Notes under the pieces: generated by a model
The model's input: the letters and a program-made list of their open reading frames with translations, nothing else
Told to the model about the DNA's origin: nothing
The model's database searches: none
Source: Phallusia mammillata
Lineage: Eukaryota
Length of the DNA stretch: 64,000 nucleotides
Assembly: GCA_965637545.1 (NCBI GenBank)
Contig: OZ281499.1
Span: 4,464,001-4,528,000 of the forward strand
Direction: 5' to 3'
Made by a program: the position numbers and the translations under genes
Part shown: positions 6,313-62,734 of the stretch, one piece after another
Layout of the letters: every line of letters starts with the position of its first letter
Position numbering within the stretch: position 1 is the stretch's first letter

Positions 6313-6379
6313 GGGAATTCCCCTTTAAGGTGAGAAAGGTTCTCTTGCGTTCCGCCGTTCACGCATCGTTGTGACGTCA
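6313..6379 (+). promoter_or_regulatory. kB palindrome + CRE module
   Basis: GGGAATTCCC 6313-6322; TGACGTCA 6372-6379. Confidence 0.55.
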
Positions 6380-6470
6380 CACTTACTGGACGTACTGCTG
6401 TGTGATGAAACCAAGCAACACAAATCCATGTATGGTAGTGTGTCGGTTTGTTGTGCATCACCCTCTACAC

Positions 6471-6790
6471 CAAGGGCGGGCAACCTTTGTTACTGTTGGG
6501 GCAAATATAATAGCCAAAATTATATCGCGGACCGCACCAGTGTATAACAGAAGGTGGTTTTACTTTGTTGCTTACAAAATATGCTTAACTACAAGTAAAC
6601 TTGGAATTTGATTATTGCCACAAATTGCCTGGTCGCAGAAAAATACCATCGGGCGCTTTGTTCTGCTCAAAATATACATTATAGTTGGACTCGTATTCCA
6701 GTACATTTGAAATCCAAGCGTCTCTGCGGGCTGCACAATCTTTAATCAAGGGCCGCATTTTGCCCGCGGGCCGCAGGTTGCCCACCCCTG
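6471..6790. mobile_element. MITE, hAT-like TIRs
   Basis: Ends caagggcgggcaacc / ggttgcccacccctg; TSD not clear; absent from paralogous spacers. Confidence 0.6.
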
Positions 6791-7067
6791 CTGTTAACCC
6801 ACTCAATACCTTAAATTGCCTTTTGAAGTACCATTTGTGGAGTATTTCATTGTGAAGCGTCATTTTTTCATTTAATAGCCCAACCTGTTACCCCACTACA
6901 CACTTAAAGTAAATTACACATTAAATGTCTAAATTTAATGCGAATTGACTGGTTTTCACCCCGTATAGTATGAATATTTAGGCAGACTATCGATTACCGT
7001 GTTTCACTTCACATCGCAATACCTGGTGAATGCACGAACTTTTCATAATAAGCCGTAGTGTTTATGC

Positions 7068-7282
7068 CAGTAGTTCTCAAACTGTGCGTCGCGACGCCCT
7101 GGTGCGTCGTTTCAATTTTCCAAGGGCGTCGCAGAATAGTTCCGTTTTGCGAGTTTTTGTTGTTGTATCAATAAACACAACTTTAATAATAAGTTTCCTC
7201 ATTAAATTTTATTTGCTGGTCTGTCACAAGTCAAGAAAAACTTGTTCAGGGGCGTCGCAACAGAAAAGTTTGTGAACCACTG
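7068..7282. mobile_element. hAT-type MITE
   Basis: TIRs cagtagttctcaaact / agtttgtgaaccactg; 8-bp TSD gtttatgc / gtttgtgc; empty site gtttatgcaat at ~56151. Confidence 0.85.
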
Positions 7283-7642
7283 GTTTGTGCAATTGCAACA
7301 CATGCTAAGCCACCTTTCTAATAAATTCCTTAATCATTACAAAAGTGTGGCAATCGCGTGACATTAGTTATCTGTGCCACTAGTTTCTGCGAAGAGAAAC
7401 TAAAGTTATCACTTGTTTGATTGTCACCTGTGTTACAAAAGTCGTAAAACGGATCATTTTACGCTTGCCCCATGTTGACAATACGCCGCTACGCGATTGG
7501 TATTTGCGCGAAATTGCCGTAGCGGCTGTGGAGAAGTATCTCATTGTGTGTGTTTGGCACAAGCAGAGTCAGTTAAATAAAATCGAACTCTAAGTACAAT
7601 ACCAAAATTTAAGAAAATAGTCAAAACAGTTAAGTTTGCAGA

Positions 7643-8632: not shown

Positions 8633-9792
8633 TTCACGAATTTAAACCAACTGTACCGAATATTCATGGATATCACAAATTATGTCTTTACTGACAAAAT
8701 AACAACTTATCTGTTACTGACTGTATGCGGATAAAATCGACTTACCGCCATTAAAATTTTGACCATTCAAGATAAAAGCGATTAACGCAACAGTTTATTT
8801 CTACTTATAATTGATTTAACATAGAGAATTAGTTAACTTAAAGCGATATATCAAAATACGTATGACAGAATGCGTTTGCATGCGGTTGACTTTTTTTAGA
8901 CGTATTATATATATATTCCAGCTGTGAACTTTCATTCCTTGTTTTGCTGGCCGTCTGTTGGTGACTTTGTTTGTTTTATTATTTGCTCGTTTGCTGACTC
9001 AGTTTAATTGCTGGTTCTGAATTTTCTTGTGCTTGTGTGTTTTGTACGCTCGTGCGTGTGCGTAAATACACAAAAATTGCATTGTAACTACCTATCAAGG
9101 CAAATAAAACACGCCTTTGTGTAAGTTAAAAAGTCTGCGCAAATCTCTGCTGAGGGGGCCAGTTGAAAAAGAAAAGTAGAGGTTTTGGATTGAAGCAACA
9201 ATAAATTAGGACAAAGAAGTGACTCAAAAAAGGCCTCTGTAGTTTTGAACAAAGAACTACGAAAGAAAAAAAATCACGTCAGAACACTGGCTCCCATTTC
9301 AATCAAAAGAAAAAACCCTTCAACAAGAATACGATTTTTATGTGGTTGGGTTTTCACGCATCACTGTCACGTCATGCATACCAGAGTCACTGGTGTATGA
9401 CATCATGTATACCAGTGGCACTTGTAAGATTAACCTCTGTTACACAGGACCCATGCGAATTATTTTCAGCATGACTAATGATAACGATACGCAGCTATAT
9501 AAAAAGTATTTTCGCCCGTCGTTGTTTGAATTTGCATTAAAATGTTTAAACAAAGTTTCATTTTTGTCACAGGATTTTTACTCCCGCTGGAGTTAACCTT
9601 GTATTTGACATTGACTTGATGAATTGTGTCTATGTGTGTACAAATTATAATGTATAAACTGTACAATTGTAATTAATATGATATTTTATAACATATTCTC
9701 TGCACTTAATTTTAGTCGTATGTTGCGTAATATTTTAATTGGTAGTTACAACTTTTCAACGAGGCACAAGGCCCATTCGAACATAACCACAT

Positions 9793-9817
9793 GGGAATTC
9801 CCCCTTGGCGTGAGTAA
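9793..9817 (+). promoter_or_regulatory. kB palindrome + AP-1-like site ~190 bp upstream of copy 5
   Basis: GGGAATTCCC 9793-9802; TGAGTAA 9811-9817. Confidence 0.5.
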
Positions 9818-9988
9818 GGTTTTGTTGTGTATCGTCACGGAATGGTTTGTGCGGTTAACCTTAGCACACAAGCAGAAGTAAATCATTGTGAAAATCTGGA
9901 GCCACTAAAAACAGAATCAGTTGAATAAAATCGAACTCAAAATACAGCACCAAAGTTTAGAATCATACGAAAGAGTTTATCTTAGAGA

Positions 9989-10945: not shown

Positions 10946-12017
10946 TGCGTCTTTGTTTATTTCATTATGTGCTATTTTGTTTAATTGCTGGTTCTAGATC
11001 TTTTGTGCATGTGCGTGCGTAAATACATGAAATCTGTATTGTAAATAGACATTATTTGAAATGCAAGCAAAACACGTCTTCGTGTGACATAAAATGTTGC
11101 GTAAATCTCTGCTGAGAAGACCGATTGCAGAAAGAAAATTGAGATTTGTGATTGAAGCAACAACAAATTAAGACAAGGAAGTGACGCAACAAGGTCGCAG
11201 TCTCAAACAAATAACTACGGAAACAAATAACTAAGAAAAAAATCTCGCGTCAAAACCCTGGCTTTCATTTTAACCAAAAGGAACAAAAATTCAGTAAGAG
11301 TCAGGTTTTTATGCGGTTGGGTTGTCACGCACGATTGTGAAGTCATGTATACCAGAGTCACTGGTGTGTGGCGTCATGTATACTAGAGTGACTTGCATGA
11401 TTAACCCCTGTTACACAGGACCCATATGAATTTTTTTCAGCATGACTAATATTAACAATACGCCGCTATATATAAAATGGTGTTTGTGCCTCAAGACCAA
11501 CAATGCCAGTATTTGAGATAAGAAAGTTACGGTATTGGTTTGTGTGCTTAAAATTGACAGCTGTGGAGAAGCTAGTCATTGTAATTGTGAGAAAGCAATA
11601 AATCAGTTGAGTAAATTCGAAATCTATTTACGATACCAAAATTCGAAAAACAGACAAAAGAGTTAAGTTTGCAGAATGAGTCGTTTGAAAACGTGCCTGC
11701 TTTGTTTACCATAACCATTGAAGTTGGGGATCAAGTTAAAGTATGCAGCATAATATTGTAATGCCAAGACTCTGTTGTGTCTATACAAACTGTTAGTTCA
11801 ACTGTTCTGTCGATATGCGTGTCGCGTAATTGGACCTGCACTTATTGAAAACACTTGTAAGTGTGTTTGGGTTTATTGGACCGATACAGCTTTTGTTCGA
11901 TTTTAACTTAAGCATCAGGGAGCACAACGTTTCTGCTCCTGTTAGTTGAGTATTATTCCTGAAGTGGACAGTGCAAAACTATATCTAAAATAAAGAGAAA
12001 ACATTCAAAGTTGCGGA

Positions 12018-12838: not shown

Positions 12839-13361
12839 GTAAGTTAAAGAATTAGACGGGCACAATAAGTGAACCAAATCACATCGAGTATGGTGTGTCT
12901 AAACTTTTCTGTTTAACACAGGATTTTTCCACCGAATGCCGAAGGAAATTATGATAGTGAAAAAGTGAGACAAGTCGCTGATGACATGAAGAAATTTTAT
13001 GAATGAGATATCAAATATTGTACGAACATTTTGTGCTATTAAAGATTACGCTTCAGTTAAATTCTTCCTCTCATTTCGAATTATAGCTAATGAATTATGT
13101 TGTAACTCTCTATATATTATAATGTTGGTGTAGAATTGTGTGTGTAAATACGACACATTTATACTGTAAATAAATGTAACGCTTTTGTAGCAAATAAAAC
13201 ATATTTTCATAGGATTAAAATGTCTTTGTTGAGAGCCAAAGCGATAAAGGGCAATTTGGTAGGGATCCAAACAGTAAAATTCGAAAACTTGCACCAGTTT
13301 CAGATCAAATGCCCTCACAAATATTGTCTCGCATCGAGTATTACTCAACCGTCGCACGAAA

Positions 13362-13423
13362 GGGAATTCCCCATCGGTGTGAGTCAAGTTTTATGGTGTT
13401 GGTCGCGAAATGTTGTGACGTCA
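13362..13423 (+). promoter_or_regulatory. kB + AP-1 + CRE module
   Basis: GGGAATTCCC 13362-13371, TGAGTCA 13380-13386, TGACGTCA 13416-13423. Confidence 0.6.
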
Positions 13424-14542
13424 CACATAACAGAATCACCGATGTGCGGCGAGCAAAATTCAATTAATTTATTGCTCCCAATTTAGACACAAAGGGTTAA
13501 TTCACACAAATCAGGTTTGTAATTTCCTTTCATACATTTAAGTTACATTTAGCTCCTATTCAAGTTAGCAGCACAACAAAATAACGTTGTGAACCGAAAA
13601 ACCATACGATGCGGGCTTGCAGGATGTTTCTTTTTTGTTGATAACAACCAAGTTGTCGTTTTAACTTAGTTATTAAAGTATGGCGTTATTTCCCTACAAC
13701 GCATTTAATTGAAACCATTTGGATTTTGTCGTTTCTTTCATAACCGCTAAAATTCAAAAGATTATAATAGTGGATCACAAAAATCACAAAAACTCAGCTC
13801 TCGTAGTTGTGAGCAAGTCCATTATGTAAATGGGTGAATGATCTGTGTTTACCAGAATAAAGCAAACACTTTAATTTAAGTTTGACGTGTACGAGACGAC
13901 TAGTGCTGCATTCGACCATTAAATGTTAATTTTGCGTAGAGAAGACTAGAACAGCAGAATCTCTTAACAGACCCGTTCTTCGTATGAAATAAAACACTAT
14001 ACCAATGTAACTCACAATAACAACTTTAGACCAAATTTTCAGTTACAGATGCAGGTCATTTCTCTAGGTTAAAAAAATACTAAAGAGGAATGCTGCGTTT
14101 GTCAGAATTAGTTTTTGGTATGACCAATGGTGTCGACCGAAACGTAGTTTTCCACTATGCCGGTTAGCGTGTACCTGTAACTTAAGGGATGACAAGTTCA
14201 ACTTTAACAGACAAAAGCGACCTCTTTATAATTTTTACGAGCGCAGGGGGGACAGGTAATAGCTGTATATTAAACATATAGCCCTGGATTTTACTTGGGG
14301 CATTACTTTACACAAAAGAATTAGTTTAAGACGTGTTTGATTTGTTCAACGTTACTTTGAAGTTGGTGATCAAGATTATGTTAATGTAAAAAGATTTTCA
14401 GATTTTGAAGGGCGCAATAAACCTGCAATATTCTAAAAAACATGAAAGAGCACAAATAACATCTGAGAACTGGAACCTAATTCGATTCTATGGGAAAGCC
14501 CCTTCAGTAAGAGGAAGGTTGTCCATGTGATATGGAGCGTTA

Positions 14543-16481: not shown

Positions 16482-16882
16482 AAACGTTTACAGAAAATGT
16501 CAAAATGTCCGAGAACATATATTAATCTTTATCGATTTATTTTATTCCTAAACGTGTAAATCTGTAAATAAATAATGTATAGCGGTTGTCAGTCTATTGG
16601 CATCAAGCAAGTTACAATTGTCCAGAATTTCGACGTAAAATCTGTGTTAAGTATTATTCCTAAACTTGGAACATGTTACACAATATTTAGTTGCAAAGGC
16701 AGCAGGAACAGATTTGTTTAACGTTAACTTACGATTTTACCCTAGAATGTTTTTTTGCATCAAAAAAATAGTCTTAAAAAATGGTATGCAACCTTGAGAG
16801 AAAGTAGTTGAAACAATATGTAAACGGTAAGGATTTAGTGTACATTGTGTGTTATACGAGACGAAATAAATCAGAACAGCAA

Positions 16883-16949
16883 GGGAATTCCCCCTTAACG
16901 TGAGAAAAGTTTTGTTGCGTTTCTTCGTTCACGCATCGATGTGACGTCA
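16883..16949 (+). promoter_or_regulatory. kB + CRE module
   Basis: GGGAATTCCC 16883-16892; TGACGTCA 16942-16949. Confidence 0.55.
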
Positions 16950-17487
16950 CACTTACCGGACGCACCGCTGTGTGGCGACACCAAACGACACAAAATCAAA
17001 GTATTGTTTTGAGATTAATGTATGGTAGTGTGTCGATTGTTGTGCATTACCCTAGACACCCACCCTTTACGCCACTGCCCACCTAACATAACCTAGGAGG
17101 AATTTAAAAAACAATACCTGAACTGAATTTTTAAGTGTAAGTTTCCATTTGTGGAGTATCCGTATGTGAAGCGTCACTTTGTTTACTTTACCGCCCTACC
17201 TGCTACCCCACTACACACTGAAATATATTACATATTAAACCTTAAATGTCTTCATTTAATGCAAATTGACCTGATTTTGCCCAATATAGTACGAATATTT
17301 TGGCAGACTATTGATCGCCGTGTTTCATTTCACATCGCAATACCTATGGTGAATGCACAAACTTTTTATGATACGCCAAAGTGTATATGATATTGCAACA
17401 TATGCTAAGTCACGTTTCTAGTTATTTTCTTAATCATTACGCAAGTGTGGCAATCGCATAACATAAGTTTAAACTACCTGTGTCATT

Positions 17488-18781: not shown

Positions 18782-19135
18782 GATATTAAATATTGTACGA
18801 ACATTTTGTGCTATTAAACATTACGTTGCAGTTAAATTCTTCTTCTTATTGCGAATTATAGCTAATGAATAATCTTGTAACGATCTATATATTAATGTTG
18901 GTGTAGAATTGTGTGTGTAAATACGATACATTTTACTGTAGATAAATGTAACGCTTTTGTGCTAAATAAAACATATTTTTAGACAATTGAAATGTCTATG
19001 TTGAAGCCAAAAGCGGAACATACGAAATTTGTAGCGAATCAATAAGTAAAAAAGTAATAAAGTTGCAGCAGTTTCAAACCAAATACTTCAACAAACAAAG
19101 TTTCACATTGAGAATTGCTTTAACGTCACCCGAAA

Positions 19136-19180
19136 GGGAATACCCCATCGGTGTGAGTCAAGTTCTTTGTTGTGACGTCA
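19136..19180 (+). promoter_or_regulatory. Variant kB + AP-1 + CRE module (sister at 38631-38690)
   Basis: GGGAATACCC, TGAGTCA 19154-19160, TGACGTCA 19173-19180. Confidence 0.5.
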
Positions 19181-20370
19181 CACATAAAAGAATCACTGAT
19201 GCGTGGCGACAGCAAGCGAAATTCAATCGATTTGTTGGTCCTATTTTAAACACAAAGAGTTAATTCACACAAATCATGCTCCTAAATTCCTTTCATGCAT
19301 TTAAGTATAAGAGATAGCTCCCTGGAAGTTCTAAATTATAAGCACATAAAACTGCTATTCAAGTTAGCAGTACAACAAAAAAAAAACGTTGTGAACCGAA
19401 AAAAACCACACGATGCAGGTTTGGAAGATGAAATTTTTTGATACCAACCAAGTTGTTGTTTAACTAAGTGTTTTGAATATGGCAAATATTCCCTTCAGCG
19501 CATTTAATTAAAACCACTTTGAATTTGCCGTTTCTTTCATAACCGCTAAAATTCAAGAGGTTGTAGAAGCGGACACCCCACAAATGACCAAACGGGAGCT
19601 AAAACTTAACTACGGATGGGTATATGATGTGTGTTGCGAGATTAAAGCAAACATTTTAAGTGAAGCTTGTCTTGCACGGGACTGTATAGAGCTACATTCG
19701 CGTCTTGTTAATTTGGCGTAGCTAAGACTATATTTAGAACTGCAAAAAATCTCGTTACAGATCGGTTCATCGTATGAGGTGCTTGATTGTAATGAACACT
19801 ATGCCACTGTAACTGACAATTACAATCTTAGACAAATCTTCGGTTACAGATGCACGTCATTTTTCTAGGTGGAAACAATACTAAAGAGGAATGTTGCATT
19901 TGTTTAGCATAAACAATGGTGTTCCCAAAGAGAGATAAAAAAATAGAAAAGCTACATTAGTCAATAGTAGGTTTAGTATGTAGTTGAAATCTGTTCCAGG
20001 TGATAAACCACTGGGGTTTTAGGCGACAAATTGACCTAACGTAATTTTCCACCATGTCGGTTAGCTAGTACTTGTAACACAAGGGACGACCAGTTTAAAT
20101 TCAGCAGACCAAACACAACTGTAACGTCACGTGACGTCGTGTGTTAATGTGATATGTCAACCATATATGATTCAACTGTTTGTGTCAATATGCGAGTCGC
20201 GAAATTGGAAATGTAGTTATTGTAAGTCATACTATATAAACGATGCAGCCTTTGTTTGATTTTGGCTTAATCGCAGGGAGCACAAGGTTTCTACAGCAGT
20301 ATGTTGAGCATTATACCTGAGGCAGACATAGGGAACATGTAACTTTAATAAAGGAAAAACAAGTTACAGA

Positions 20371-21461: not shown

Positions 21462-21762
21462 AATATCAAATACCATCATTGTCATCGCTTGCAGTTTCTT
21501 TCTAGTGTATATAGCAGCATACAACCTTGTAGATGTTAACCTTGTATTTAACATTGGCTTGATGAATGTCTCTGTACGTACAAATATGATGTAAATACTG
21601 TGCAATTTTGAAACCAATATTATATTTTAACACATACCATCTGCACTAATTTTAGTCGTTGTTTGCAAAACATTGCTAAATGGTAGTTAAAACTTTTGAA
21701 TGAGGCTTAAAGGTGACATGATATATTTGTTATTTGATGAGCGAAATCAGACACAACAGCAA

Positions 21763-21787
21763 GGGAATTCCCCTGTGTGCTGAGTAA
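21763..21787 (+). promoter_or_regulatory. kB + AP-1-like site (sister at 33911)
   Basis: GGGAATTCCC 21763-21772 followed by TGAGTAA. Confidence 0.5.
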
Positions 21788-22780
21788 GGTTTTGCTTCGT
21801 CGTTTTTGCCTCGATGTGACGTTACAAGCTCTGTTATGTGGCGACACAAAGGTTTTTGGTTTATAATGTGTCATGAACTGCAACACACTGAACCGCACAC
21901 ACCTCCCAGAGGTATAAGAATGCTGTATTTTACGGTCGTGGCGCTTTTATACAAGGATACCAGGCACATGTTACGTGGGGTGACACCTGGTGAATAACTA
22001 GCATAAACATAAACATCACAATAATGTAAACGAAATAGGCCAAAAATTGTAAGCCACTGCGTCGTGTTTGGTTTTCGAGCAATAACTTAGGTTTAAAGAA
22101 GTGAGAAACATGTTTATGTGAGAAATTTGCAATACAAAGACGTAGAATACTGACATATGATTATAAAATACTTTTACCTTGTATTAATCATGATCTAGAA
22201 CCTATATTTTTGTTTTTATTTCCGTAATATATGAAATTAAACCAGGTTGTTATTTCCATTTAACCTAAACTTTAGTTTGCTAACAAATTAAAAATGTGTT
22301 CAGGGAGATCAATGTCTGCGAAATTAAATGACGAGTTTGTATCAAATTGTTTATAATCGTTGATTTATTAAGCTTGTTGTATTTGCATTGGTGTTGTAAC
22401 ATTGCAAACAGTTATTTGAATAAAAGAGAAATTATAATAACCAAAGAATATTGACCTAATGATGACGATCTCGTGACTTTAGTTCTACGCTACCTGTGTC
22501 ATTAGTTTCTGCGAAACGAAACAGAAGTTGCTTGTGTGATTGTTACCTGTGTCGTTAGCAATAGGCCGCTGTATGCTTGGTATTCGCGTCTGGTGTCAAT
22601 GAGTGACGCTAGGTGATACAGGATACAACAGTTACGGTGCTGGTTTGGGTGCTCCGTTGCACCAACCGTAGCACCAGTCGTAAAGTAACTCTTTGTGAAT
22701 CTAAGGGGTCATCAAATCAGGTGAAAAAATTCAAGCCCTAAATCAAAATTTAGATACAGACGAAAGAGTTATTCTTGAGA

Positions 22781-36105: not shown

Positions 36106-36144
36106 TGTATAACAAATTTTCTGGTAAGATTCCTCTGTTACAAG

Positions 36145-41494: not shown

Positions 41495-41504
41495 GGGAAT
41501 TCCC
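41495..41504 (+). promoter_or_regulatory. kB palindrome (others at 46404, 52618)
   Basis: GGGAATTCCC. Confidence 0.5.
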
Positions 41505-41773
41505 CATGGGTGTAAGTAAAGTTTTCATGTGGTGCTTGTCGTGTACTATTTTCGTCACACATAACACAATCACTGATATGTGGCGACACCAAGCGAAATT
41601 TATACAGTTCGTTTTTAAATTTACAACACAGGGATTAATTCAATAACTCAAATAATAAATTTCTTTTCATGTTTTTAAGGTAAGTAATTAGCTTGATAGA
41701 ACCGCTAGATCAGTGCTACTCCAACTGTGGAACACGTACCGGTAGAAATTAATTGATGCTTTGCCGTCATAAG

Positions 41774-44157: not shown

Positions 44158-44860
44158 CTTTAGGCAGTTGTTGTGAAGTAAGGTCTTCTGGAAGCGATTG
44201 TCCTAAAAGCCGATAACCCTAGTCATTCCTCAAGGGCTAGGCAGTTGTTGTGTAGTAGGCAATCAGGGAAGCGATTGTCCTTCAGGCCTATAATCAAAGC
44301 GTAGAGCGTTACGATTCTTGGCTAGGCCCCAGGAAAAGTTTTGTTTTATAACTTTACTATTCGGACACAAAATATCTATTACCCAATGTTTACTATCGTA
44401 ATTTTTAGCCTTACATTGCTTCATGTGAAATTACAGATATCTGCAGTCATGAAGCATATCTCTACTGCCAGATCGGATCCGGTTTAAATTAATGAGACTT
44501 GCGACCAAATGAAGGTGAGTATAAAGTCAGGCCTGAATCAAACCCGTTTTCAATCCAGATCAAGTTATTTCGCCACGCTTTAAAAATGAAAAGTAATTAA
44601 CGAAAAGTAACTACGAGACGAAAGGTCAAATCATCGGCGAAAACCCACGCAGCCATCCAAGGCAAACTAAACACGCCTCGTTTGGCAAATCTATGCTGAG
44701 GGACGGGTTAACACAAGTGCCACAAGATAAATAACTGTTATTTGATGAGTGAATTCAAGCATAACCACAAATGAAATTACCCCTTGACGTCACCCCTTGT
44801 AGCACAACAAGAAGAAGTAACTTATTGTGAATATAGGGAGCAACTAAAAACAGAAATCAG

Positions 44861-46109: not shown

Positions 46110-47925
46110 TGAAACAATACGAATGAACATTGTGATCGCTTTCAGAATCTTTTTAGGACATTGAGTAGCATATAACCTTGCAGATTACATTGTATTTAAC
46201 GTTGGTTGACGAATTGTGTCTCTATGTATACAAATTATAATGTATAAACTGTGCAGTTTTGCAACCAATATGATATTTTATAACACTACTTTCTGCACTA
46301 TTTTTTTTTCGTTTTTTGCGCAACATGAAAACTTTTGAATGAGGCGCAAGGGTCATATGATAAATAATTGTTACTTGATGAAAGAAATCAAACACAACCA
46401 CACGGGAATTCCCCTTTGTAGTGACTAAGGTTTTGTTAAGTTTCGTCGTTCACACATTGATATCACGTCACCCTTACGAGACGCTTTATTCTGTGGCGAC
46501 ACCAAGCGACACAAAATCAACTTATATTTTAACCGTTAGTGACAAAGTTTTGAGTTTAATGGTAACAGAACAGGACAAACACCTTTAGCCACAGTATCAC
46601 GTTGTCATTTGAGCAATAAGAAACAGCATCAATTTACGCATGGAATTTTTGTACACATTGTAGTAGTTCTTCCTTTAATTGAATCGAACGTTGATTTGCA
46701 GTTAAACTGTGACTTTGAACAGTGGTTTGAGTAAAAAAGCGAAACTTATAATAATCAATACTATTGGGGTCGATTGCGAGACTTCAGTTTTAATCTACCT
46801 GTGCCATAAGTTCTGTGAAGCGAAACAAATGTTACTTGTGTGATTTTTCCCTCTGTTACAAAGGCCACAAAATAAATCATTTTCAGCATGACTAATGTTA
46901 ACAATACACCGCTATAAAAAAGGTGTTTGTGCCCCACGACCATTTGAAACAAGACAGTTACGGTATGGTTTGTGTGCTTAACCTTACCACCTGTGGGGAA
47001 GAAACTCATTCTGAGAAGGCAATAAATCAGTTTAATAAATTCCAACTCTAAATACAATACCAAAAGTCGAAAGTTTGCAGAATGACGTTGCAAACTTGCT
47101 TGCTTTGTTTACCATAAGTTGGTGATCAAGATACAAATCGTTTTCATTTCAACTGTTTATGTCAATATGCGCATCGCAAAATTGGACTTATTGTCAATGA
47201 AAACACTTGCAAGTTATGTTTAAATTGCTTTCATTTAAAGTGTGCTTGTTTTGAAAAAACTAATTAGGCTACTTCAGTTTAAAACAGGTTTTTAAACATG
47301 TCTCAATGAGATTTTGATATGCAGACACCGTAAATTATCTCATTTTGTCAGCAAACAAAACCGCTGTAGTTTAAATTAATTTGATGTTTGCTATCCAATG
47401 TCCGATTTTGGGACTTTAAAGGATTTATCTGATTTGATGTTTACCAAGTGTCATGCTGTTAAAGGATAATTTGGAAACAAACAAATTAAGTTCGAAAAAG
47501 GCCTCCAAGTATAATATCGCGAGTTTTTGCACCCTGCAAACTAGAGAAGAGGCTAAAGCTTACGTAGTCTCTTAATTGCAATACAGGCACCACATTTATT
47601 TTGTTACAATGATATTAGTCAGTTTGTAACTTAAGGGAATAAACGTTTAGCATAACTTTGTTCACACATTTGTGTCGCAGAAGAATTGGTTTGGGTTCAT
47701 AAAACCATTTTTGTTCTATCACCTGTGGTTGTTCGTTTTTTGTAACACATGATTATATAATTACAAACGGAATATATCAGTTACTTTATTGGTTTGTGTG
47801 CTTAACCCTAGCACCTGTTGGTGAGCTCCTCATTGTAAATGTGAGAAGCCACCAAACTAAGTAGAAGTTCAAAGTCTACATACAGCATCAAATTTTGGAA
47901 ACAGACAAAGAGTTAAGTTTGCAGA

Positions 47926-52246: not shown

Positions 52247-53633
52247 GATTTCAAACACTGTGTAAAAAATTTTCCTGTTTAAGATTACGCTGCACTTAAA
52301 TTCGTTTTGTATTTCCGCTTTATAGGTAATGAATAATCTTGTAATTATGTAATTTTAGAAATGTTGGTGATGAATTTGCATGTGAATGTGTGTATAAAAG
52401 ACATTTCGTTACATTTGTATTGTAGATAAATGTAATGCTTCTGTGGAAAATAAAGCATATTTTAGTTGATTAAAATGACTATATTAAGGACAAAAACAAA
52501 ACAGGCAATTCTTGAGGAATCCAAAAAGTTAAAACCGAAAACGTTGCAGCAGTTTCAGATCAAATACTTTCACAAATATTATCTCATGTCGAGAATTACT
52601 CTTAACTTCACATAAAAGGGAATTCCCCACAAGTGTAAATAAAGTTTTCATGTGGTGTGCTTGTCACGCTCTGTTATGGCGTCACACACAACAAAGTCAC
52701 TGATGTGTATCGACACCATGCGATACTTAATCAGTTTGTGTTTTAAATTCAAAACAAACTTATTTCAATAACTTAGACCGTAAGTGTGTTTTCCATAATG
52801 TTTTCGGGTAAGTAATTAGCTTTATAGAATAGATCAGTGCTACTCAAACTGTGGAACACGTACCGGCAGAAATTAGTCCATGTTTTTCCGTCATAAGAGT
52901 TTACCATCCCACGCTGAAGAAAAAAATACAAATGGTGAAAATATTTTCCTTCATAAAAGTTTACCATCCCACGCTGAGGAAAAATACAATGGTGAAAGAA
53001 TTTGCCTGGTATTTAGGAGTTTAAAATGCCTTTCCTTCACTTTTATCTTCCAAGTTATGTATTTTGAAATGTTTCAGGGCACAAGCTAAATGTGTTTTGG
53101 GGTACACAAAAATATTAAAGCAAATGTAGATCAACGTATTCGATTTAAACATCAGCTACTGCATCTCTATTTAAATTTAATTACACGCTTATGTACAACA
53201 TCATACCTCTCATATTTGTCATGACGTCGCACTATACACATGGTTCCGTCTTTTTCCGCATCGTATTTGTGGAAATGTCAAGCATTAAAAATGAGTGACA
53301 ATTTACAGCTGAAAAATTGTTGATTGGAAAAGTTTAGTGTTGCAAATATGATAATAATGCACGGTTAGGTTCCTACGAATAGCGAGATATGATCGAAATT
53401 TGCAACGCGGTTTCCGTTTGAAAGGAAATTGGTGGGCATAGCATGCAAATGTTACACCACACATAAACAGTTCGTTTTTACTATTAGATCTTGAAAAAAA
53501 CGGTAAATAGTCTTTCAGTCGGTAAAAGTAGGGTATTTGCAACGATATAACACGAACTACTTAGAACCACTTTTAAACTTTTTTACGGGCAGGAGTATAC
53601 ACACTTACAGTTACCGCAATATCAGCATAAATA

Positions 53634-55352: not shown

Positions 55353-55720
55353 AAACAAGATGCCCAAGAACGTATATTGATGTTTTTCGATTAATTCTGT
55401 TCCTAAATGTGTAAATCTGTAAATAAATAATGTATAGCAATTGTCAGTCTATTGGGGGAAGCAAGTTACAATTGTCCGGAATTTCGACGTAACATCTGTG
55501 CTGAGTATTAATCCTAACCCGAGAACATGTTACGCAATGTTTACTTGCATAGGCAGCAAAACCAAACGATTTTCCCCTCCAAAGGTTTTATTGCATCAAA
55601 AATGATATAGTCTTAAAGATGGTATGCAACCATGCGAGAAAGTAGTTGAAACAATTCATAAACTTCATGCATTTAGCGTACATTGTGTGGAATACGAGAC
55701 GAAATAAATCAGAGCCGCAA

Positions 55721-55787
55721 GGGAATTCCCCCTTAATGTGAGAAAGGTTTCTTTGTGTTTCTTTGTTCAAGCATCGATGTGACGTCA
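55721..55787 (+). promoter_or_regulatory. kB + CRE module (sisters 57896-57962, 62424-62490)
   Basis: GGGAATTCCC 55721-55730; TGACGTCA 55780-55787. Confidence 0.55.
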
Positions 55788-56375
55788 CACTTACAGGACG
55801 CACTACCGTATGGCGAAACCAAGCGACACAAAACCAATGCATGGTTTTGATTGATGTTGGGTTGTGTGTCGAATGTTGTGCATTACCTACCACCTACACA
55901 CCCACCCTTTACCCCCCAGGCTATCTAAATTTTAAAGGAATCGTACAATTTATAGACTAAGCCACTACAAAGCGTCACTTACTGAGTTTCATCTTGTAGC
56001 CCTACCTGTTTACCCGCTAACATTCTAAAGTAGAATAAGCATTTAATAATGTATGATTTTATTGAGATTTGCACCCCTTATAGCTTGTTTATTTAAGCAG
56101 AATATTAATTCTGCTAAATAGCCGTGTTTCACTTTATAATAAGCCATACAGTTTATGCAATAGCAGCATATGCTAAGCCACCTTTCTATTTTTTGAAACC
56201 ATTACGCAAGTGTGGTGATCGTGTTACAAAGATGCTACCTGTACCACCAGTTTCTGTCAAGCGAAACTGAAGTTACTTTTATAATTGTCTTTTATGATTA
56301 AAAGCAGTTGAATAAATTCTACCTTTAAGTACAGTACCAAAATTTGAAAACAGGCAAAAAGAGTTAAGTTCGAGA

Positions 56376-57492
56376 ATGAGTTTGTCGTTTCAAAACGTGC
56401 TTGATTTGTTAAACATAACAATTGAAGTTTGTGATCAAGATTCTATAGATCAACAAAGATTTTCAGATTTTAACGGAGCATTTCGAGAATATCTTAAGGA
56501 AAAAGTTTTGTACTTTCAAAACGAGGGAAGAAAGATTTCTTTTGAAAATTTACAATATTACAAAATTGAGATTGCTGATCTGAATGGAAAACAAGTTCTT
56601 CGAATGTTGATATCACTTTTAAACAACAAAGAGTTGATAAAAGATGAAAATTGCTTCGTGTTTCTTACCAACAACGAACCAGATACTGCAATGACTGTGC
56701 TTTGCAGATATTGGATTGAGCTACGAGGCACTTTGACTGAAACGGATAAAGAAAAAGGAAATTGGTTTAAAGCTTTTGATGACAAATTATGTCAGAAAAG
56801 GCAAAATAACCCACGTTATATTGGCTTGGATGACAAAACTATTAAAAAGCTTCGTTCCACTTTGCCAGAGGAATATATAAAATACATGGAGCAAAACATG
56901 GCCGATCTGCAACCGAAATATCGTCGATTGTTTTTTGGAATTGTATTCGAAATAGCAAAGTGTCACGTGAAAAATTGGCTGGTCTACGAACACTTAAAGG
57001 ACTTTCCTAGGTCGTCTCTAATTAAATTAGCGATTGATAATGGATGTAGTGGAAAGTTGCAGGCCGTGTTTAACGACCATGATATCATAAAAGGTTTGTT
57101 TAAAGAAATCAGTCAACAGCTTAGTGAAAAAGAAAGACTTTCTGTCTACCATGCTCGTAAAGATGAACTACGAAAACAAGGAGCAAAGTTAATTATTGAC
57201 AAGTAAGTTTGCTACCTTCTGTTGGAAAATGTCACCATTAGTAAAATGCTAGCAATGCAAATCGGGTGCAACGGCATAAAGGTAACTGGCGCACACGTTA
57301 AGTGCAAAAATGGCTTTAAAACGTACCTTTTTTTCATTGTTTTTTTAATATATTACCAACGTGAGACATATAGTTTTCGCCAAAGCAAATTCCCTTTCTC
57401 GTTTCAGAATTTTCCCACCAACTGCTGAAGGAAAGTACGATAAAAGTGAAATAACGAAAGTTGCTGATCAGATGAGATCATTTTACTTGTAA
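56376..57492 (+). CDS. Array copy 22, intact, tail B; exons 56376-57202 + 57408-57492; 303 aa
   Basis: Donor 57203, acceptor 57407. Confidence 0.9.
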
Positions 57493-58522
57493 AAACTTTT
57501 GCAGAAAATGTCAAGAAGCCCGAGAACGTATATTGATCTTGTACGATTCATTTTGTTCTTAAATGAGGAAATCTGTAAATAATAAATGTATAGCAATTGT
57601 CAGTCTATTGGCGTCAAGCAAGTTACAATTGTCCAGAATTTCGACATAAAATCTGTGTTGAGTATTAATCCTAAACCGAAGAGATGTTACACAATATTTA
57701 GTTACAAAAACAGCAAAACCAAATTTGATGAACGTTAGCTTACGATTTTACCCTTTAATGATTTTATGGCATCAAAAAACATATAGTCCTAAAATGATAT
57801 GCAACCATGTGAGAAAGTAATTCAAACAATGTATAAACGGTGAGCATTTCGCGTACATCGTGTTGAGTACGAGACGAAACGAACCAGAACAGCAAGGGAA
57901 TTCCCCCTTAACGTGAGAAAGGTTTTCTTGCGTTTTGTCGTTCACGCTTGGATGTGACGTCACACTTACCGGACGCACTGCTGTGTGGCGACACCAAGCG
58001 ACACAAACGTTTTTCACCCCGTACAGTATGAATATTTAAGCAGAATATACATCACCGTATTTCACTTTACATCACAATATCTTCAGTGAATGTACAATTT
58101 GTTTCACGATAGTCCGCTGTGTATGTACAATAGCAATTTATGCTAAGCCACATTGCTAGTTATTTTGGAAATCATTGTGGCGATCGCATGGCATAAGTTT
58201 AAATCTACCTGTGCCATTAGTTTCTGCCAAGAGAAACTGAAGTTACTTGTTTGATTTTCACCTCTGTTCCAAAGGTCATTTACAAAATGACTGGTGTTAA
58301 CAATACGCCGTTACGCAATTGATATTTGTTCGAAATCAAAACGTGCAAACGATATTTGATACGTGAAAAGTAAGTTACGGTGTTGGTTTGTGTGCTCAAC
58401 CTTAGAAACTGTGGAGAAGGAACACATTGTGAAAGTGAGGTGTCATTCCAAGCAATTGAAAAAATTCAAACTTTATTACAGTACCAAAATCTGGAAACAG
58501 ACAAAAAGAGTTAAGTTCGAGA

Positions 58523-59511
58523 ATGAGTTTGTCGTTTCAAAACGTGCTTGATTTGTTAAACATAACAATTGAAGTTTGTGATCAAGATTTTATAGACCCA
58601 CAAAGATTTTCAGATTTTAAAGGAGCATTTCGAGAATATCTTCAGGGAAGAGTTTTATACTTTCGAAGCGAGGGAAGAGAGATTTCTTTTGAAAAATTAC
58701 AATTTTACAAACTTGAGATTGGTGATCTTAATGGAAAACAAGTTCTTCGAAGGTTGATAACACTTACAAACAACGAAGAGTTGATAAAAGATGGAAATTG
58801 ATTTGTGTTTCTTACCAACAACGAACCAGAAATTGCCCTGACTGTGCTTTGCAGATATTGGATTGAGCTACGAACCGTTTTGGCTAAGTCCGATCCAGAT
58901 AAGGGCAGTTGGCCAAGAGCTTTTGATGACAAAACATGCCAGGAGAAGCTGAACGACTTACGTTATATTGGGTTGGATGACAAAACTATTAAAGAGTTTC
59001 GTTCAACTTTGCCTGAGGAATATTCAAAATACATGGAGCAAAACATGGCCGATTTGCAACCAAAATATCGTCGATTGTTTTTTGGAATTGCATTCGAAAT
59101 AGCAAAGTGTCACGTGAAACATTGGCTGGTTTACGAACACTTGAAGGACTTTCCCAGGTCGTCTCTCATTAAGTTAGCGATTGATAACGGATGCAGTGGA
59201 AAGTTGCAGGCGGTGTTTAACCACCATTTTTTACATGTTTCTTTTATTCGTAAAACAACTACCGATAGACAGGAACAAATTACTAAAATTCAACAACAGA
59301 AAGCCGAATGGCGCAGAGAAGGAGCAAAAGAGATTATTGTTTGGTAAGTCAATCTTTTATACACAGCAAAATAGAAAATTAACCCCAATAGTTGATTATT
59401 TCTGTAACTAGTTTTGTCTGCCATAGGATTTTTCCACCCAATGCTGAAGGAAAATACGATGGTGAAGAAGTAAAAAAGGCTGCTGACAAGATAAAGAGAT
59501 TTTACGAATAG
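58523..59511 (+). pseudogene. Array copy 23, tail C, nonsense TGC>TGA at 58799-58801; last exon 59427-59511
   Basis: ORFs 58523-58801 and 58805-59347 in the same frame; splice sites intact. Confidence 0.8.
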
Positions 59512-60203
59512 ACCACGAGTTTAAACCAATATGAGTTGAACTGTAGCGAAAAGACATGAGCATCGTGTATGTAACTAGCGAAAAAAACAACACTTAAACA
59601 CAAAATTAAAAACACAAATTTTTAGATATTCAAGGCCAAAGCGATTTACCATCAAAATGTGTGTGACAGAATCCGTTTGTGCGTTTGATCTTTGCAATGA
59701 CCCGTGTATTTCAGCTGTAAACTTTCACTCCTCTTTCCAGCCTTTCTTCGTTTGCTGACCATTAGTTCGCCACTTTGTTTATTTCATTTTTTGCCCTCTT
59801 TGTTGAATAAGTTTAATTACTGGTTCTAATTAGTCTTGTAGTTGTGTGTATGTACGTCCGTACGTGTGAGAAAATAAACAGAACTTGCATTGTAAATAGG
59901 CTTGTCGTTCAGGGCAAATAAAACACGCCTTTGTATAAATAAAACGTCAGTGTAAATCTCTGCTAAAGGGAACCAGTTGGAAAAGGAAAGTAGAACTTTT
60001 TGATTGAAGCAACAATAAATTACGACAAACATGTAAAGAACGAAAAAAACTTCGCGTCAGAACACTGGCTTCCATTTTAACCAAAGGAAAAACAAACCTT
60101 CAGTAAGAGTAAGATTTTTATGTGGTTGGGTTGTCACGCACGATTGTGACGTCATGCACACCAGTGTGACTGGTGTATGACGTCATGTATAACATATTTT
60201 CAG

Positions 60204-60643
60204 TAGTGATGGGACGAAACCAGGTTTTGAAGCGCGTACCGATACCGAGTACGAATACCACATGTATATACCTTCGATACCGAGTACTTAAGTACAGTGT
60301 TGTACTTAGTTGTATATCACTGGCTAGTTTATCTGCCATGACCGGGGTACAGGCATGTACACACACATGCAGAAAAATGTAATTTCCATAATTCTCCATC
60401 CATACGATTGCAAAAGAAAGTCGGTAACCTGGCGGAACTTTTCCCGATTTTGTGTTGTCCGAGGCAAATATTGGCATAAAGTTGCCCGTATTCTTATGAT
60501 GTAAATCGGCCTTAGGTACTCACACGTTGGTATCAAAAACTGAAACAAAATATTTCGATACCGAGTACGAGTATCGATACCACTAAAATCGTTCGATACC
60601 GTCGATACCGAGTACCGAGTACCGGGTACCCGTCCCATCACTA
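60204..60643. mobile_element. Second copy of the same MITE at the homologous site
   Basis: TIRs tagtgatgggacg / cgtcccatcacta; same right flank gttacaag, left TSD deleted; copied with the segment. Confidence 0.85.
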
Positions 60644-60923
60644 GTTACAAGGGTCACAAATGCGATCATTTTCAGCATGACTGATGTTAACAGTGCGCAG
60701 CTGTATGCTTGGCATTTGTCCCTGACGATAACAAAAAACGACGTTGACGCTACGTGATGCGTGACGCGACAGTTTCGGTGTTGTTTTGTGCGCTTGAACC
60801 TTGGCACCTCTGGATATGGAACTCATTATAAATGTGAGGTATCATAAAAAATCACTTAAATAAATTCGAACTTTAAAGACAGTACAAACATTTGGAAACG
60901 GAGAAGAGAGTTAAGATTGCAGA

Positions 60924-62037
60924 ATGAGTTTGTCGTTTGAAAACGTGCTTGATTTATTAAACATAACCATTAAAGTTGGTGATCAAGATTCTGTCAGTCC
61001 ACAAAGATTTTCAGATTTTAAAGGAACATTTCGAGACCATCTTGAAAGAAGAATGTCGTACTTTCAAAGTCAGGGACGTACGTTTTCATTTGAAAACTTA
61101 CAATATTACAAAATTGGGATTGGTGATTTGAATGGAAAACAACTTTTTCGAATGTTGATATCACTCACAAACAACGAAGAGTTGATGAAACCTGGAAACT
61201 GCTTCGTGTTTCTTGTCAACAACGAACCAGATACTTCACTGACTGTGTTTCACAGTTATTGGTTTGAACCACGAGCTACTTCTGGATCGGATAATGATAG
61301 AGGAAATTGGACTCGAGCCTTTGATGACAAAACACGACAGGAGAGGCAGAAATATCCTTTTTCCTTTGGATATGACAACCAGGCCATCAAAGAGTTTCGC
61401 TCCACATTATCTGAGCAATATGTGAATTATATGAAGCAAAAAATTGCCAATATAAAACCAAAATATCGCCGGTTGTTTTTCGGAGTTGTGTTTGAAATTG
61501 CAAAGTGTCATGTGAGGTATTGGGAAGTTTACAAACATTTGAAAAACTTTCCAACGGCTTCCCTTATCAAATTGGCAATTGATAATGGATGTAGTGGAAA
61601 GTTGCAGGCCGTGTTTAACGACCATGATATCATAAAAGGTTTGTTTAAAGAAATCAGTCAACAGCTTAGTGAAAAAGAAAGACTTTCTGTCTACCATGCT
61701 CGTAAAGATGAACTACGAAAACAAGGAGCAAAGTTAATTATTGACAAGTAAGTTTGCTACCTTCTGTTGGAAAATGTCACCATTAGTAAAATGCTAGCAA
61801 TGCAAATCGGGTGCAACGGCATAAAGGTAACTGGCGCACACGTTAAGTGCAAAAATGGCTTTAAAACGTACCTTTTTTTCATTGTTTTTTTTATATATTA
61901 CCAACGTGAGACATATAGTTTTCGCAAAAGCAAATTCCCTTTCTCATTTCAGAATTTTCCCACCAACTGCTGAAGGAAAGTACGATAAAAGTGAAGTAAG
62001 GAAAGTTGCTGATCAGATGAGATCATTTTACGTGTAA
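60924..62037 (+). CDS. Array copy 24, intact, tail B; exons 60924-61747 + 61953-62037; 302 aa
   Basis: Donor 61748, acceptor 61952. Confidence 0.9.
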
Positions 62038-62734
62038 AAACTTTTGCAGAAAATGTCAAGAAGCCCGAGAACGTATATTGATCTTGTACGATTCATTTTG
62101 TTCTTAAATGAGGAAATCTGTAAATAAATAATGTATAGCAATTGTCAGTCTATTGGCGTCAAGCAAGTTACAATTGTCCAGAATTTCGACATAAAATCTG
62201 TGTTGAGTATTAATCCTAAACCGAAGAGATGTTACACAATATTTAGTTACAAAAACAGCCAAACCAAATTTGATGAACGTTAAGTTACGATTTTACCCTT
62301 TAATGATTTTATGGCATCAAAAAACATATAGTCCTAAAATGATATGCAACCATGTGAGAAAGTAATTCAAACAATTTATAAACGGTGAGCATTTCGCCAG
62401 TACGAGACGAACCAGAACATCAAGGGAATTCCCCCTTAACGTGAGAAAGGTTTTCTTGCGTTTTGTCGTTCACGCTTGGATGTGACGTCACACTTACCGG
62501 ACGCACTGCTGTGTGGCGACACCAAGCGACACAAACGTTTTTCACCCCATATAGTATGAATATTTAAGCAGAATATACATCACCGTATTTCACTTTACAT
62601 CACAATATCTTCAGTGAATGTACAATTTGTTTCACGATAGTCCGCTGTGTATGTACAATAGCAACTTATGCTAAGCCACATCGCTAGTTATTTTGGAAAT
62701 CATTGTGGCGATCGCATGGCATAAGTTTAAATCT

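What the first reader, a model, noticed from the sequence alone, without database searches (positions are those of the whole stretch)
6313..62490. Recurrent NF-kB / AP-1 / CRE module in the spacers
Seen: 12 perfect GGGAATTCCC palindromes (6313, 9793, 13362, 16883, 21763, 33911, 41495, 46404, 52618, 55721, 57896, 62424) and 4 variants (19136, 26068, 31788, 38631). They are retained in spacer families whose surrounding sequence differs strongly, usually with TGAG(T/A) ~8-10 nt downstream (perfect TGAGTCA at 13380, 19154, 38649) and TGACGTCA ~35-60 nt downstream. Known: these match Rel/NF-kB, AP-1 and ATF/CREB consensus sites, a combination typical of inducible animal immune genes. Caveats: the copies are not independent, and the GTGAG could instead be a splice donor of a non-coding first exon.
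Basis: partly seen in the sequence, partly recalled or inferred. Interest (0 to 1): 0.72.

Follow-up and report, generated by a model that had tools for sequence, protein, structure and literature searches.

The report
Conserved kB-CRE module in sea-squirt gene array
Most of the roughly 25 tandem copies of an uncharacterised sea-squirt gene have, in the spacer ahead of them, the same short set of DNA motifs, led by a perfect NF-kB-type palindrome, kept intact while the DNA around it has diverged beyond recognition; this looks like a shared regulatory switch, but no binding or expression test was possible.

Summary
There are 12 exact GGGAATTCCC sites (0.01 expected by chance) and the 4 listed variants. 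All lie on the + strand in spacers of a tandem array of about 25 copies of a ~276-aa orphan gene.

The motif is much better conserved than its flanks. Between three spacer families, identity is 0.92 over AAGGGAATTCCCC, 0.33 in the 5' flank and 0.61 at four-fold coding sites. It is the best-conserved 10-mer in a 500-nt alignment.

Three more conserved blocks follow:
- GTGAG, then RGTTTT at a fixed +14 spacing from the kB site
- TGTGACGTCAC (CRE; 15 exact sites against 1.1 expected)
- a second, degenerate CRE-like box

The AP-1 reading fails: TGAGTCA occurs in 3 copies of one family and is not enriched (9 against 10.1 expected).

In Clavelina, a distantly related sea squirt, kB-like sites followed after about 14 nt by GTTTTC stand ahead of two homologous genes. 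This points to a DNA-level element older than this species.

The most likely reading is a Rel-type kB plus bZIP promoter or enhancer module. Rel binding, inducibility and an immune role were not tested. RNA contigs showed no transcripts here, and the rival splice-donor reading of GTGAG stays open.

The scan noted the same module 52 kb upstream in this genome (s1-364059), with no follow-up.

The parts
6252..6431 (+). Family A module. kB GGGAATTCCC at 6313, GTGAGA, AGGTTC, CRE TGACGTCA at 6372. Ahead of the broken copy at 7643.
9742..9896 (+). Family C module, short form. kB at 9793, GTGAGT, AGGTTTT, no CRE. It runs straight into the proximal block, 196 nt before the ATG at 9989.
13286..13488 (+). 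Family B module. kB at 13362, GTGAGTCA (exact TGAGTCA at 13380), CRE at 13416. Ahead of the intact copy at 15364.
16804..17019 (+). Family A module. kB at 16883, CRE at 16942. Ahead of the intact copy at 17802.
19060..19251 (+). Family B module. Variant kB GGGAATACCC at 19136, TGAGTCA at 19154, CRE at 19173.
21683..21851 (+). Family C module. kB at 21763, CTGAGT (no GT), TGACGTTA. The downstream copy at 22781 is broken and lacks the TACAG acceptor.
25987..26203 (+). Family C module. Variant kB GGTAATTCCC at 26068, CRE at 26127. Ahead of the intact copy at 27592.
31708..31924 (+). Family A module. Variant kB GGGAATTTCT at 31788, CRE at 31847. Ahead of the intact copy at 32438.
33829..33964 (+). 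Family C module. kB at 33911, CTGAGT, CRE block deleted. Ahead of the broken copy at 34387.
38555..38761 (+). Family B module. Variant kB GGGAATACCC at 38631, TGAGTCA at 38649, CRE at 38683. Ahead of the intact copy at 39914.
41418..41619 (+). Family B module. kB at 41495, GTAAGT, half CRE (CGTCAC). It lies 3.6 kb before the next ATG at 45126.
44763..44792 (+). Decayed C-type module: ATGAAATTACCCC, then TGACGTCA at 44785. It is followed by a broken 5' gene fragment.
46326..46540 (+). Family C module. kB at 46404, GTGACT, TCACGTCA.
52542..52754 (+). Family B module. kB at 52618, GTAAAT, TGGCGTCA. Ahead of the intact copy at 54048.
55642..55853 (+). Family A module. kB at 55721, CRE at 55780. 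It lies 655 nt before the ATG of the intact copy at 56376.
57817..58030 (+). Family A module, used as reference. AAGGGAATTCCCC at 57894-57906, GTGAG at 57913, AGGTTTTC at 57920, TGTGACGTCACAC at 57952, GTGGCGACACCAAGCGACAC at 57985.
62362..62558 (+). Family A module. kB at 62424, CRE at 62483. Ahead of the truncated copy at 62761.
11298..11376 (+). kB-less sister module (type E). It keeps GAGTCAGGTTTTTATG and the CRE-like boxes. In place of kB it has CTGGCTTTCATTTTAACC. Others of this type are at 9333, 24097, 36026 and 60101.
36026..36105 (+). Type E module with two exact TGACGTCA sites 31 nt apart (36067, 36098). A MITE follows it.
60101..60185 (+). Type E module with two exact TGACGTCA sites (60147, 60178). 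Ahead of the intact copy at 60924.
58179..58522 (+). Proximal block before the ATG, the most widely shared non-coding island (up to 18 of 23 spacers). It holds an ISRE-like GAAACTGAAGT at 58233, AACCTTAG, GTGAGG, and a conserved ..TACAG|TACC acceptor about 40 nt before the ATG.
56376..57203 (+). Main coding exon of an intact copy (276 codons). The apparent stop codon TAA sits inside a GTAAGT donor.
57407..57492 (+). Small 3' coding exon of that copy. It is conserved in 19 units, and AATAAA follows at 57581.

Best explanation
The recurrent motifs form a roughly 125-nt cis-regulatory module that acts at the DNA level. It belongs to a tandemly amplified, ascidian-specific gene family.

The module has four parts:
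- a high-affinity palindromic Rel/NF-kB-type site, AAGGGAATTCCCC
- a box RGTTTTY exactly 14 nt further on, whose binding factor is unknown
- a palindromic CRE, GTGACGTCAC, for ATF/CREB-type bZIP dimers
- about 33 nt further on, a second, degenerate CRE-like box, TGTGGCGACAC

I infer that it is the inducible promoter or 5' enhancer of the gene that follows it in each unit. A separate, more widely conserved proximal block next to the ATG would carry the 5' UTR, its splice acceptor and possibly the core promoter.

Shown here: the motifs, their order, spacing and strand, and conservation well above both flanks and silent coding sites. The kB, N14, GTTTTC arrangement also stands ahead of two homologous genes in one Clavelina locus.

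Inferred only: which proteins bind, which gene is controlled, and inducibility.
For: The counts exceed chance: GGGAATTCCC 12 against 0.01 expected, and TGACGTCA 15 against 1.1 expected, 14 of them inside modules and 1 in the decayed module copy near 44770.

Between-family identity is 0.92 for the kB block, 0.84 for GTGAG and 0.78 for RGTTTT. The 5' flank is 0.33 and the 6-nt spacer 0.24. Silent four-fold coding sites of the same genes are 0.61 and median dS is 0.68.

The four best-conserved 10-mers in a 500-nt alignment are GGGAATTCCC (0.94), GAGAAAGGTT (0.77), TGTGACGTCA (0.72) and GACACCAAGC (0.67), against a median of 0.36.

Conserved blocks of 5-13 nt are separated by unconserved spacers of fixed length. 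This argues against gene conversion or recent duplication as the cause.

There is no RNA covariation and no Rfam match.

In Clavelina locus L006, four kB-like sites on the + strand lie ahead of two homologous genes. Each is followed after about 14 nt by GTTTTC or ATTTTC. That is 4 composite sites (5 overlapping pattern matches) against 0.27 matches expected in 72 kb.

GGGAATTCCC is the standard palindromic kB probe, bound by NF-kB from protists to vertebrates (PMC8677719), and it is the DNA in the p50 crystal structure 1NFK (PMC10527052). Ciona has a canonical NF-kB pathway that responds to LPS (PMC7347617).
Against: There is no binding, accessibility or expression evidence. Contigs of four small RNA-type runs cover only a transposon in the 6 kb that I laid, so the transcription start site and the exons are unknown.

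Intact and broken genes carry perfect kB sites equally often, and 3 of the 4 variant sites stand ahead of intact genes. The link to the downstream gene's fitness is therefore not shown.

The module sits at a near-constant 299-352 nt after the upstream gene's poly(A) signal, but 196-3631 nt before the next ATG. Its type also tracks the upstream gene's C-terminal cassette. It could therefore serve the upstream gene or the whole cluster.

Seven other loci of distant homologues have no such composite: L001-L004, L005 and L007-L009, of which L001-L003 carry one and the same protein. Nine copies in this window lack a kB site.

Other factors that bind a GGGAA core cannot be excluded.
Confidence: 0.58

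Rival explanations
1. GTGAG is the splice donor of a short non-coding first exon. The transcript would start just upstream of, or at, the kB palindrome. The palindrome would lie in exon 1, and the GTTTT and CRE blocks in intron 1. This reading can coexist with DNA-level factor binding near the start site.
For: GT is kept in 14 of 16 copies. The substitutions seen (GTGAGA, GTGAGT, GTAAGT, GTAAAT, GTGACT) fit donor rules, whereas GTAAGT and GTGAGA break an AP-1 site.

Four of the five kB-less type E modules have GTAAGA within 2 nt of the same place; 9333 has no GT there.

The two CTGAGT copies (21763, 33911) are exactly those whose downstream TACAG acceptor is deleted.

Short-form copy 9989 gives a neat 52-nt GTGAGT...AACCTTAG interval.

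DNA after the module is the fastest-diverging part of the spacer and is full of insertions, as expected for an intron.

The gene has other small introns.
Against: No transcript or splice junction was seen.

Except for the kB site, the sequence upstream of it, where the core promoter and exon 1 would lie, is not conserved between families. The supposed intron holds three conserved blocks.

Three of the four Clavelina modules keep kB and GTTTTC at the same spacing with no GT between them.

The co-loss of donor and acceptor is a single evolutionary event in two sister pseudogenes.

Ascidians also trans-splice, so the acceptor need not have a cis donor (own knowledge; scan note s1-408621).
Confidence: 0.35
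2. The module has no function of its own. It is repeated only because the units are recent duplicates or are homogenised by gene conversion.
For: The copies are paralogous, and some units are 95-97% alike. Pseudogenes keep perfect sites.
Against: Between families the flanks are at random-level identity (0.33) while the motif is at 0.92, above silent coding sites at 0.61. The conserved tracts are only 5-13 nt long and are separated by diverged spacers of fixed length, unlike conversion tracts. A similar composite occurs in Clavelina.
Confidence: 0.05
3. The module belongs to the upstream gene or to the array as a whole. It could be a 3' enhancer, an insulator or termination element, or a shared cluster enhancer, rather than the promoter of the next gene.
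For: In 10 of 11 measurable units the kB site is 299-352 nt after the upstream poly(A) signal, across families A, B and C. Module type tracks the upstream gene's C-terminal cassette: A follows ..LIIDK, B follows the ..DISS.. cassette, and E follows ..IIDW. Within families, DNA upstream of the module is better conserved than DNA downstream of it.
Against: Physical closeness alone explains the linkage. The three spacers ahead of the differently headed genes at 3796, 30277 and 51253 lack the module. In Clavelina, one module sits about 520 nt before a family gene's ATG, with a plausible donor and acceptor between them.
Confidence: 0.12
4. The palindrome is bound by a factor other than Rel that recognises a GGGAA core, for example an Ikaros-like zinc finger or a CSL-type factor.
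For: No binding data exist. The conserved block AAGGGAATTCCCC is longer than, and not symmetric beyond, the 10-mer.
Against: The 10-mer is an exact match to the optimal palindromic kB site used as the NF-kB probe across eukaryotes (PMC8677719, PMC10527052). The Clavelina variants GGGAATTTCC and GGGACTTCCC fit GGGRNWYYCC, and GGGTATTCCC fits it on the opposite strand; the fourth, TGGAATTTCC, fits on the opposite strand in a register shifted by 1 nt (GGGAAATTCC at 6399). CSL needs TGGGAA, which is not present (sequence; own knowledge).
Confidence: 0.12

Closest known systems
kB sites of Rel/NF-kB-dependent inducible promoters (palindromic class, GGGAATTCCC)
   Same: There is an exact match to the optimal palindromic kB 10-mer. 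It lies close to bZIP (CRE) sites in a compact block upstream of genes, and it is kept under selection across diverged paralogues.
   Different: There is no evidence of Rel binding or induction. The target genes are an orphan family of unknown function. The position relative to the transcription start is unknown.
Interferon-beta enhanceosome and E-selectin-type promoters, which combine NF-kB with ATF/CREB (and IRF) sites (own knowledge)
   Same: kB and CRE-type sites are combined within about 60 nt, with fixed spacing of some elements. An ISRE-like GAAACTGAAGT lies in the proximal block of 8 units.
   Different: Order and spacings differ. The RGTTTTY partner box matches no factor that I could assign. 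Nothing shows cooperative binding.
AP-1 site (TGASTCA)
   Same: Three family-B copies read TGAGTCA.
   Different: The other 13 copies read TGAGAAA, TGAGTAA, TAAGTAA, TAAATAA or TGACTAA. The motif is not enriched in the window and is absent from the Clavelina modules.
Non-coding first exon with its 5' splice site
   Same: There is a GTRAGW consensus at a fixed place, with a conserved acceptor before the ATG.
   Different: No transcript evidence exists. Conserved blocks lie on the supposed intron side, and Clavelina lacks the GT.

Membership tests
Rel/NF-kB binding site (kB) | Sequence fits GGGRNWYYCC | tested here: met
   12 exact GGGAATTCCC. The two GGGAATACCC variants fit on the opposite strand (GGGGTATTCC), while GGTAATTCCC and GGGAATTTCT do not fit. 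Every consensus hit in the window but one (14493) lies in a module.
Rel/NF-kB binding site (kB) | Conserved above neutral background | tested here: met
   Between-family identity is 0.92, against 0.33 in the flanks and 0.61 at four-fold coding sites.
Rel/NF-kB binding site (kB) | The organism encodes a Rel homology factor | not testable with these tools
   Only this window can be read. Ciona has NF-kB, IkB and IKK (PMC7347617). Scan note s1-382239 reports an IkB-zeta-like gene in this genome (unchecked).
Rel/NF-kB binding site (kB) | Bound by Rel protein; mutation alters induction | not testable with these tools
   This needs gel-shift, CUT&Tag or reporter assays.
CRE (ATF/CREB bZIP site) | TGACGTCA palindrome, enriched and conserved | tested here: met
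   15 sites against 1.1 expected: 10 of the 16 kB modules have an exact site, there are 4 in type E modules, and 1 in the decayed copy. Between-family identity is 0.72.
AP-1 site | TGASTCA present and conserved in the module | tested here: not met
   It is exact in 3 of 16 copies, all in family B. The window has 9 against 10.1 expected.
5' splice site of a non-coding exon | GT at +1 and +2 with a GTRAGT-like context | tested here: met
   GT is present in 14 of 16 copies, and +3 is a purine in all 16.
5' splice site of a non-coding exon | A junction seen in RNA | tested here: inconclusive
   The laid contigs showed no joints and no coverage of the genes.
Inducible immune gene family | Recognisable immune domain, or induced expression | tested here: not met
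   There is no Pfam, PDB-sequence or fold match. Expression was not seen. dN/dS is 0.34, which is not diversifying overall.

The most novel reading that the evidence does not exclude
kB, N14, GTTTTC and a bZIP site may form an ancient composite enhancer. Its exact geometry would have been kept since the split of the phlebobranch and aplousobranch sea squirts. It would drive a tunicate-only multigene family, with a confidently predicted fold that has no solved relative, as an NF-kB-induced effector set.
Probability: 0.25. Interest if true: 0.65.

Novelty: new member of a known kind. Interest (0 to 1): 0.48.

Why it matters
If the module is a working Rel/ATF switch, it marks a large, unannotated, tunicate-specific gene family as a probable target of NF-kB signalling. 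There are about 25 copies in this window, and the array continues at least 52 kb upstream. That would give sea-squirt immunology a new effector candidate and a compact natural promoter to test. The exact kB-to-GTTTTC spacing shared with Clavelina also offers a defined composite element for asking which partner factor works with Rel in invertebrate chordates.

Tried and rejected
- **RNA evidence.** One run search and one read-laying run were allowed. The four RNA-type runs covered only a MITE at 60203-60645 and traces of coding sequence. That gave no start site or junction.
- **Protein identity.** The word search was blank. Pfam and PDB sequence searches were blank.
- **Structure.** The first AlphaFold model, built from paralogues only, was useless (pLDDT 38.8). 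The second, with 32 diverse sequences, was good (pLDDT 88.5). It had no fold match: Foldseek best E 0.69, and VIA best Z 4.9 on the last helix only. Weak Foldseek rows for nucleotidyltransferase folds (MiD51, CD-NTases, cGAS) did not survive re-alignment, so I dropped that idea.
- **More relatives.** The search for related loci on metagenome contigs found none. An exact-protein look-up found nothing.
- **Structured RNA.** Rejected: no covariation and no Rfam match.
- **Spliced-leader remnant.** TTGAATAAG in the proximal block is only a 9-mer, with no full leader.
- **TATA boxes.** TATA-like stretches about 45-50 nt before the kB site occur in families B and C but not in A, which is too inconsistent to use.
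- **Literature.** Searches for the Ciona homologue accessions found nothing. A search for ascidian Rel gene names found nothing relevant.
- **Spliced product.** The joined two-exon protein was not built or searched. Only the main exon was used, by reference.

Full report
**What is in the window**

The window is a head-to-tail array of one gene family, all on the + strand. tblastn with one copy finds about 25 copies, 53-78% identical in protein. Fourteen have an intact main exon of 273-277 codons.

The apparent stop codon lies inside a conserved GTAAGT or GTGAGT donor. A small 3' coding exon and a poly(A) signal follow 70-380 nt later. A conserved acceptor (..TACAG|TACC) lies about 40 nt before most ATGs. 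I searched the main exon only, by reference; the joined two-exon product was not built.

The family has no Pfam, PDB-sequence or word-search relative. A profile search of 1.84 billion representatives gave 34 hits. Those I looked up that carry a name are uncharacterised proteins of Ciona intestinalis and Clavelina lepadiformis. The rest are from gene-poor, eukaryote-like metagenome contigs. Identity is 28-31%.

The genome is therefore an ascidian's. Another scan note names it Phallusia mammillata (unchecked).

With those homologues in the alignment, AlphaFold gives a confident model (pLDDT 88.5, pTM 0.87). It matches no solved fold. Median dN/dS is 0.34 and median dS is 0.68.

**The observation**

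All 12 exact GGGAATTCCC sites are present, against 0.01 expected. The 4 variants are as listed. Each sits in a block of about 200 nt that nhmmer finds 16 times.

The blocks fall into three families:
- A: 6313, 16883, 31788, 55721, 57896, 62424
- B: 13362, 19136, 38631, 41495, 52618
- C: 9793, 21763, 26068, 33911, 46404

Between families they are only 42-50% identical over 500 nt, which means they are effectively unalignable.

**Is the motif more conserved than its surroundings?**

Yes. I compared only pairs from different families, which removes the non-independence of close copies. Identities were:

| Segment | Between-family identity |
|---|---|
| 5' flank, positions -60 to -4 | 0.33 |
| AAGGGAATTCCCC | 0.92 |
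| next 6 nt | 0.24 |
| GTGAG | 0.84 |
| RGTTTT, positions +25 to +30 | 0.78 |

Four-fold degenerate sites of the same genes are 0.61 identical.

I then ranked all 10-nt windows of the 500-nt alignment. The top four are GGGAATTCCC (0.94), GAGAAAGGTT (0.77), TGTGACGTCA (0.72) and GACACCAAGC (0.67), against a median of 0.36.

The conserved tracts are 5-13 nt long. They are separated by diverged spacers whose length is kept. This is the pattern of protein-binding footprints, not of recent duplication or gene conversion.

Across whole spacers there are only three islands shared between families: the 3' coding exon, this module, and a 150-340-nt block next to the ATG.

**Motif by motif**

- **kB.** Every match to GGGRNWYYCC in the window but one lies in a module.
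- **CRE.** TGACGTCA occurs 15 times against 1.1 expected. Ten sites are in kB modules, four in sister modules and one in a decayed copy. The conserved form is the 10-nt palindrome GTGACGTCAC. About 33 nt later, the block TGTGGCGACAC is a diverged second copy of it. The kB-less sister modules have two exact CREs 31 nt apart.
- **AP-1.** Not supported. TGAGTCA occurs 9 times in the window against 10.1 expected, and in only three modules, all of family B. The conserved letters are G-T-R-A-G, followed by variable letters.
- **RGTTTTY.** G+26, T+27 and T+28 are invariant in all 16 copies.

**Sister modules**

Five spacers (9333, 11298, 24097, 36026, 60101) carry a related module. It has the GTTTT and CRE part, but CTGGCTT(C/T)CA(T/C)TTTAA(C/A)C stands where the kB site would be. 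It resembles an IRF site by eye only. The three spacers ahead of 3796, 30277 and 51253 have no module.

**Evidence from another species**

Two family genes in Clavelina locus L006 are preceded by four kB-like sites on the gene strand: GGGTATTCCC, GGGAATTTCC, TGGAATTTCC and GGGACTTCCC. Each is followed after 14 nt (13 in one case) by GTTTTC or ATTTTC, in the same register as in the window.

The composite pattern gave 5 overlapping matches at these 4 sites, against 0.27 matches expected in 72 kb of Clavelina DNA, with a maximum of 2 in 200 simulations. In two of the four, a bZIP-like TGAYGCA lies about 50 nt after the kB site. There is no GT in the 14-nt spacer in three of the four.

The other loci of distant homologues have no such composite. 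It is therefore a feature of some subfamilies, not of the whole family.

**How it probably works**

GGGAATTCCC is the standard palindromic probe bound by NF-kB proteins from protists to vertebrates (PMC8677719). It is also the DNA in the p50 homodimer structure 1NFK (PMC10527052). Ascidians have the canonical pathway (PMC7347617).

The simplest reading is a compact Rel plus bZIP response module, with a third, unidentified partner held at a fixed distance from the kB site.

Which gene it serves is inferred, not shown. The kB site lies 299-352 nt after the previous gene's poly(A) signal in 10 of 11 measurable units, but 196-3631 nt before the next ATG. Module type also tracks the previous gene's C-terminal cassette. 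The DNA after the module is the fastest-changing part of each spacer and carries insertions. This fits a first intron or a loose enhancer-to-promoter interval.

**The splice-donor alternative**

- The substitution pattern is donor-like.
- The sister modules keep GTAAGA nearby.
- The two CTGAGT copies are the ones that have lost the downstream acceptor.
- Copy 9989 has a 52-nt GTGAGT...CCTTAG interval.

Against it:
- The supposed exon side is unconserved apart from the kB site.
- The supposed intron side holds three conserved blocks.
- Clavelina keeps the kB-to-GTTTTC geometry without a GT.

The two readings are compatible, because a kB site can lie at or just after a start site. RNA would settle it. 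The one read-laying run allowed showed only a transposon. The silence of the genes in those small runs is compatible with inducible or adult-restricted expression, but it proves nothing.

**Verdict**

The AP-1 part is rejected. The immune-inducible role is untested.

This is a new instance of a known kind of element. It has two points of interest: the cross-species fixed-spacing partner box, and the orphan gene family it accompanies.

The scan noted the same kind of module 52 kb upstream in this genome (s1-364059), and kB-like cassettes ahead of other arrays (s1-399170, s1-355954). None of these was followed up.

Noticed in passing
window 852-63228 (e.g. 56376-57203): The array's gene is a tunicate-only family. 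The only named relatives are uncharacterised Ciona and Clavelina proteins (28-31% identity). The AlphaFold model is confident (pLDDT 88.5) but has no PDB fold match, so the fold may be undescribed.
   Followed up: partly
window, last ~45 codons of each main exon (e.g. 57070-57203, 12700-12836, 1545-1679, 59200-59338): The C-terminal tail comes in four discrete cassettes (..DELRKEGAKLIIDK, ..DISS..RLRLEGAKVIIDK, ..NKSSSLDEVHQYKA..TIIDR, ..DRQEQITK..EIIDW). They are shuffled among otherwise different gene bodies, and dN/dS is highest there (0.72).
   Followed up: partly
window 60203-60645 and 36143-36594: A MITE of about 440 nt with terminal inverted repeats TAGTGATGGGACG. The two copies are 90% alike and sit at the same place after two type E modules. 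Sequences like it are very abundant in the RNA-type contigs laid on the window.
   Followed up: partly
window 5159, 7396, 17502, 22518, 32126, 36978, 56263, 58233 (+ strand): An ISRE-like GAAACTGAAGT (13 hits with up to 1 mismatch, against 2.4 expected). Eight are on the gene strand, seven of them about 250-315 nt before an ATG and one (56263) 113 nt before it, inside the conserved proximal block. This may be an IRF-type site.
   Followed up: partly
L005 (Clavelina, GCA_961645235.1 CAUIVY010000125.1): A Clavelina family member lies between two genes for HD-domain (PF01966) proteins of about 500 aa.
   Followed up: no
window 55001-55225: A stretch unique to this unit lies inside the 3' intron of the copy at 54048; no other spacer aligns to it. 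It coincides with the hammerhead-bearing insertion noted by another reader (s1-369016).
   Followed up: partly
window 44800-45125: A broken 5' gene fragment (degenerate ATGAGTTTGTCG... start) lies between a decayed module and the intact copy at 45126. This shows local rearrangement.
   Followed up: no
window 52884-52997: A 60-nt tandem duplication (1.9 copies, 89% match) lies just after the family B module at 52618.
   Followed up: no
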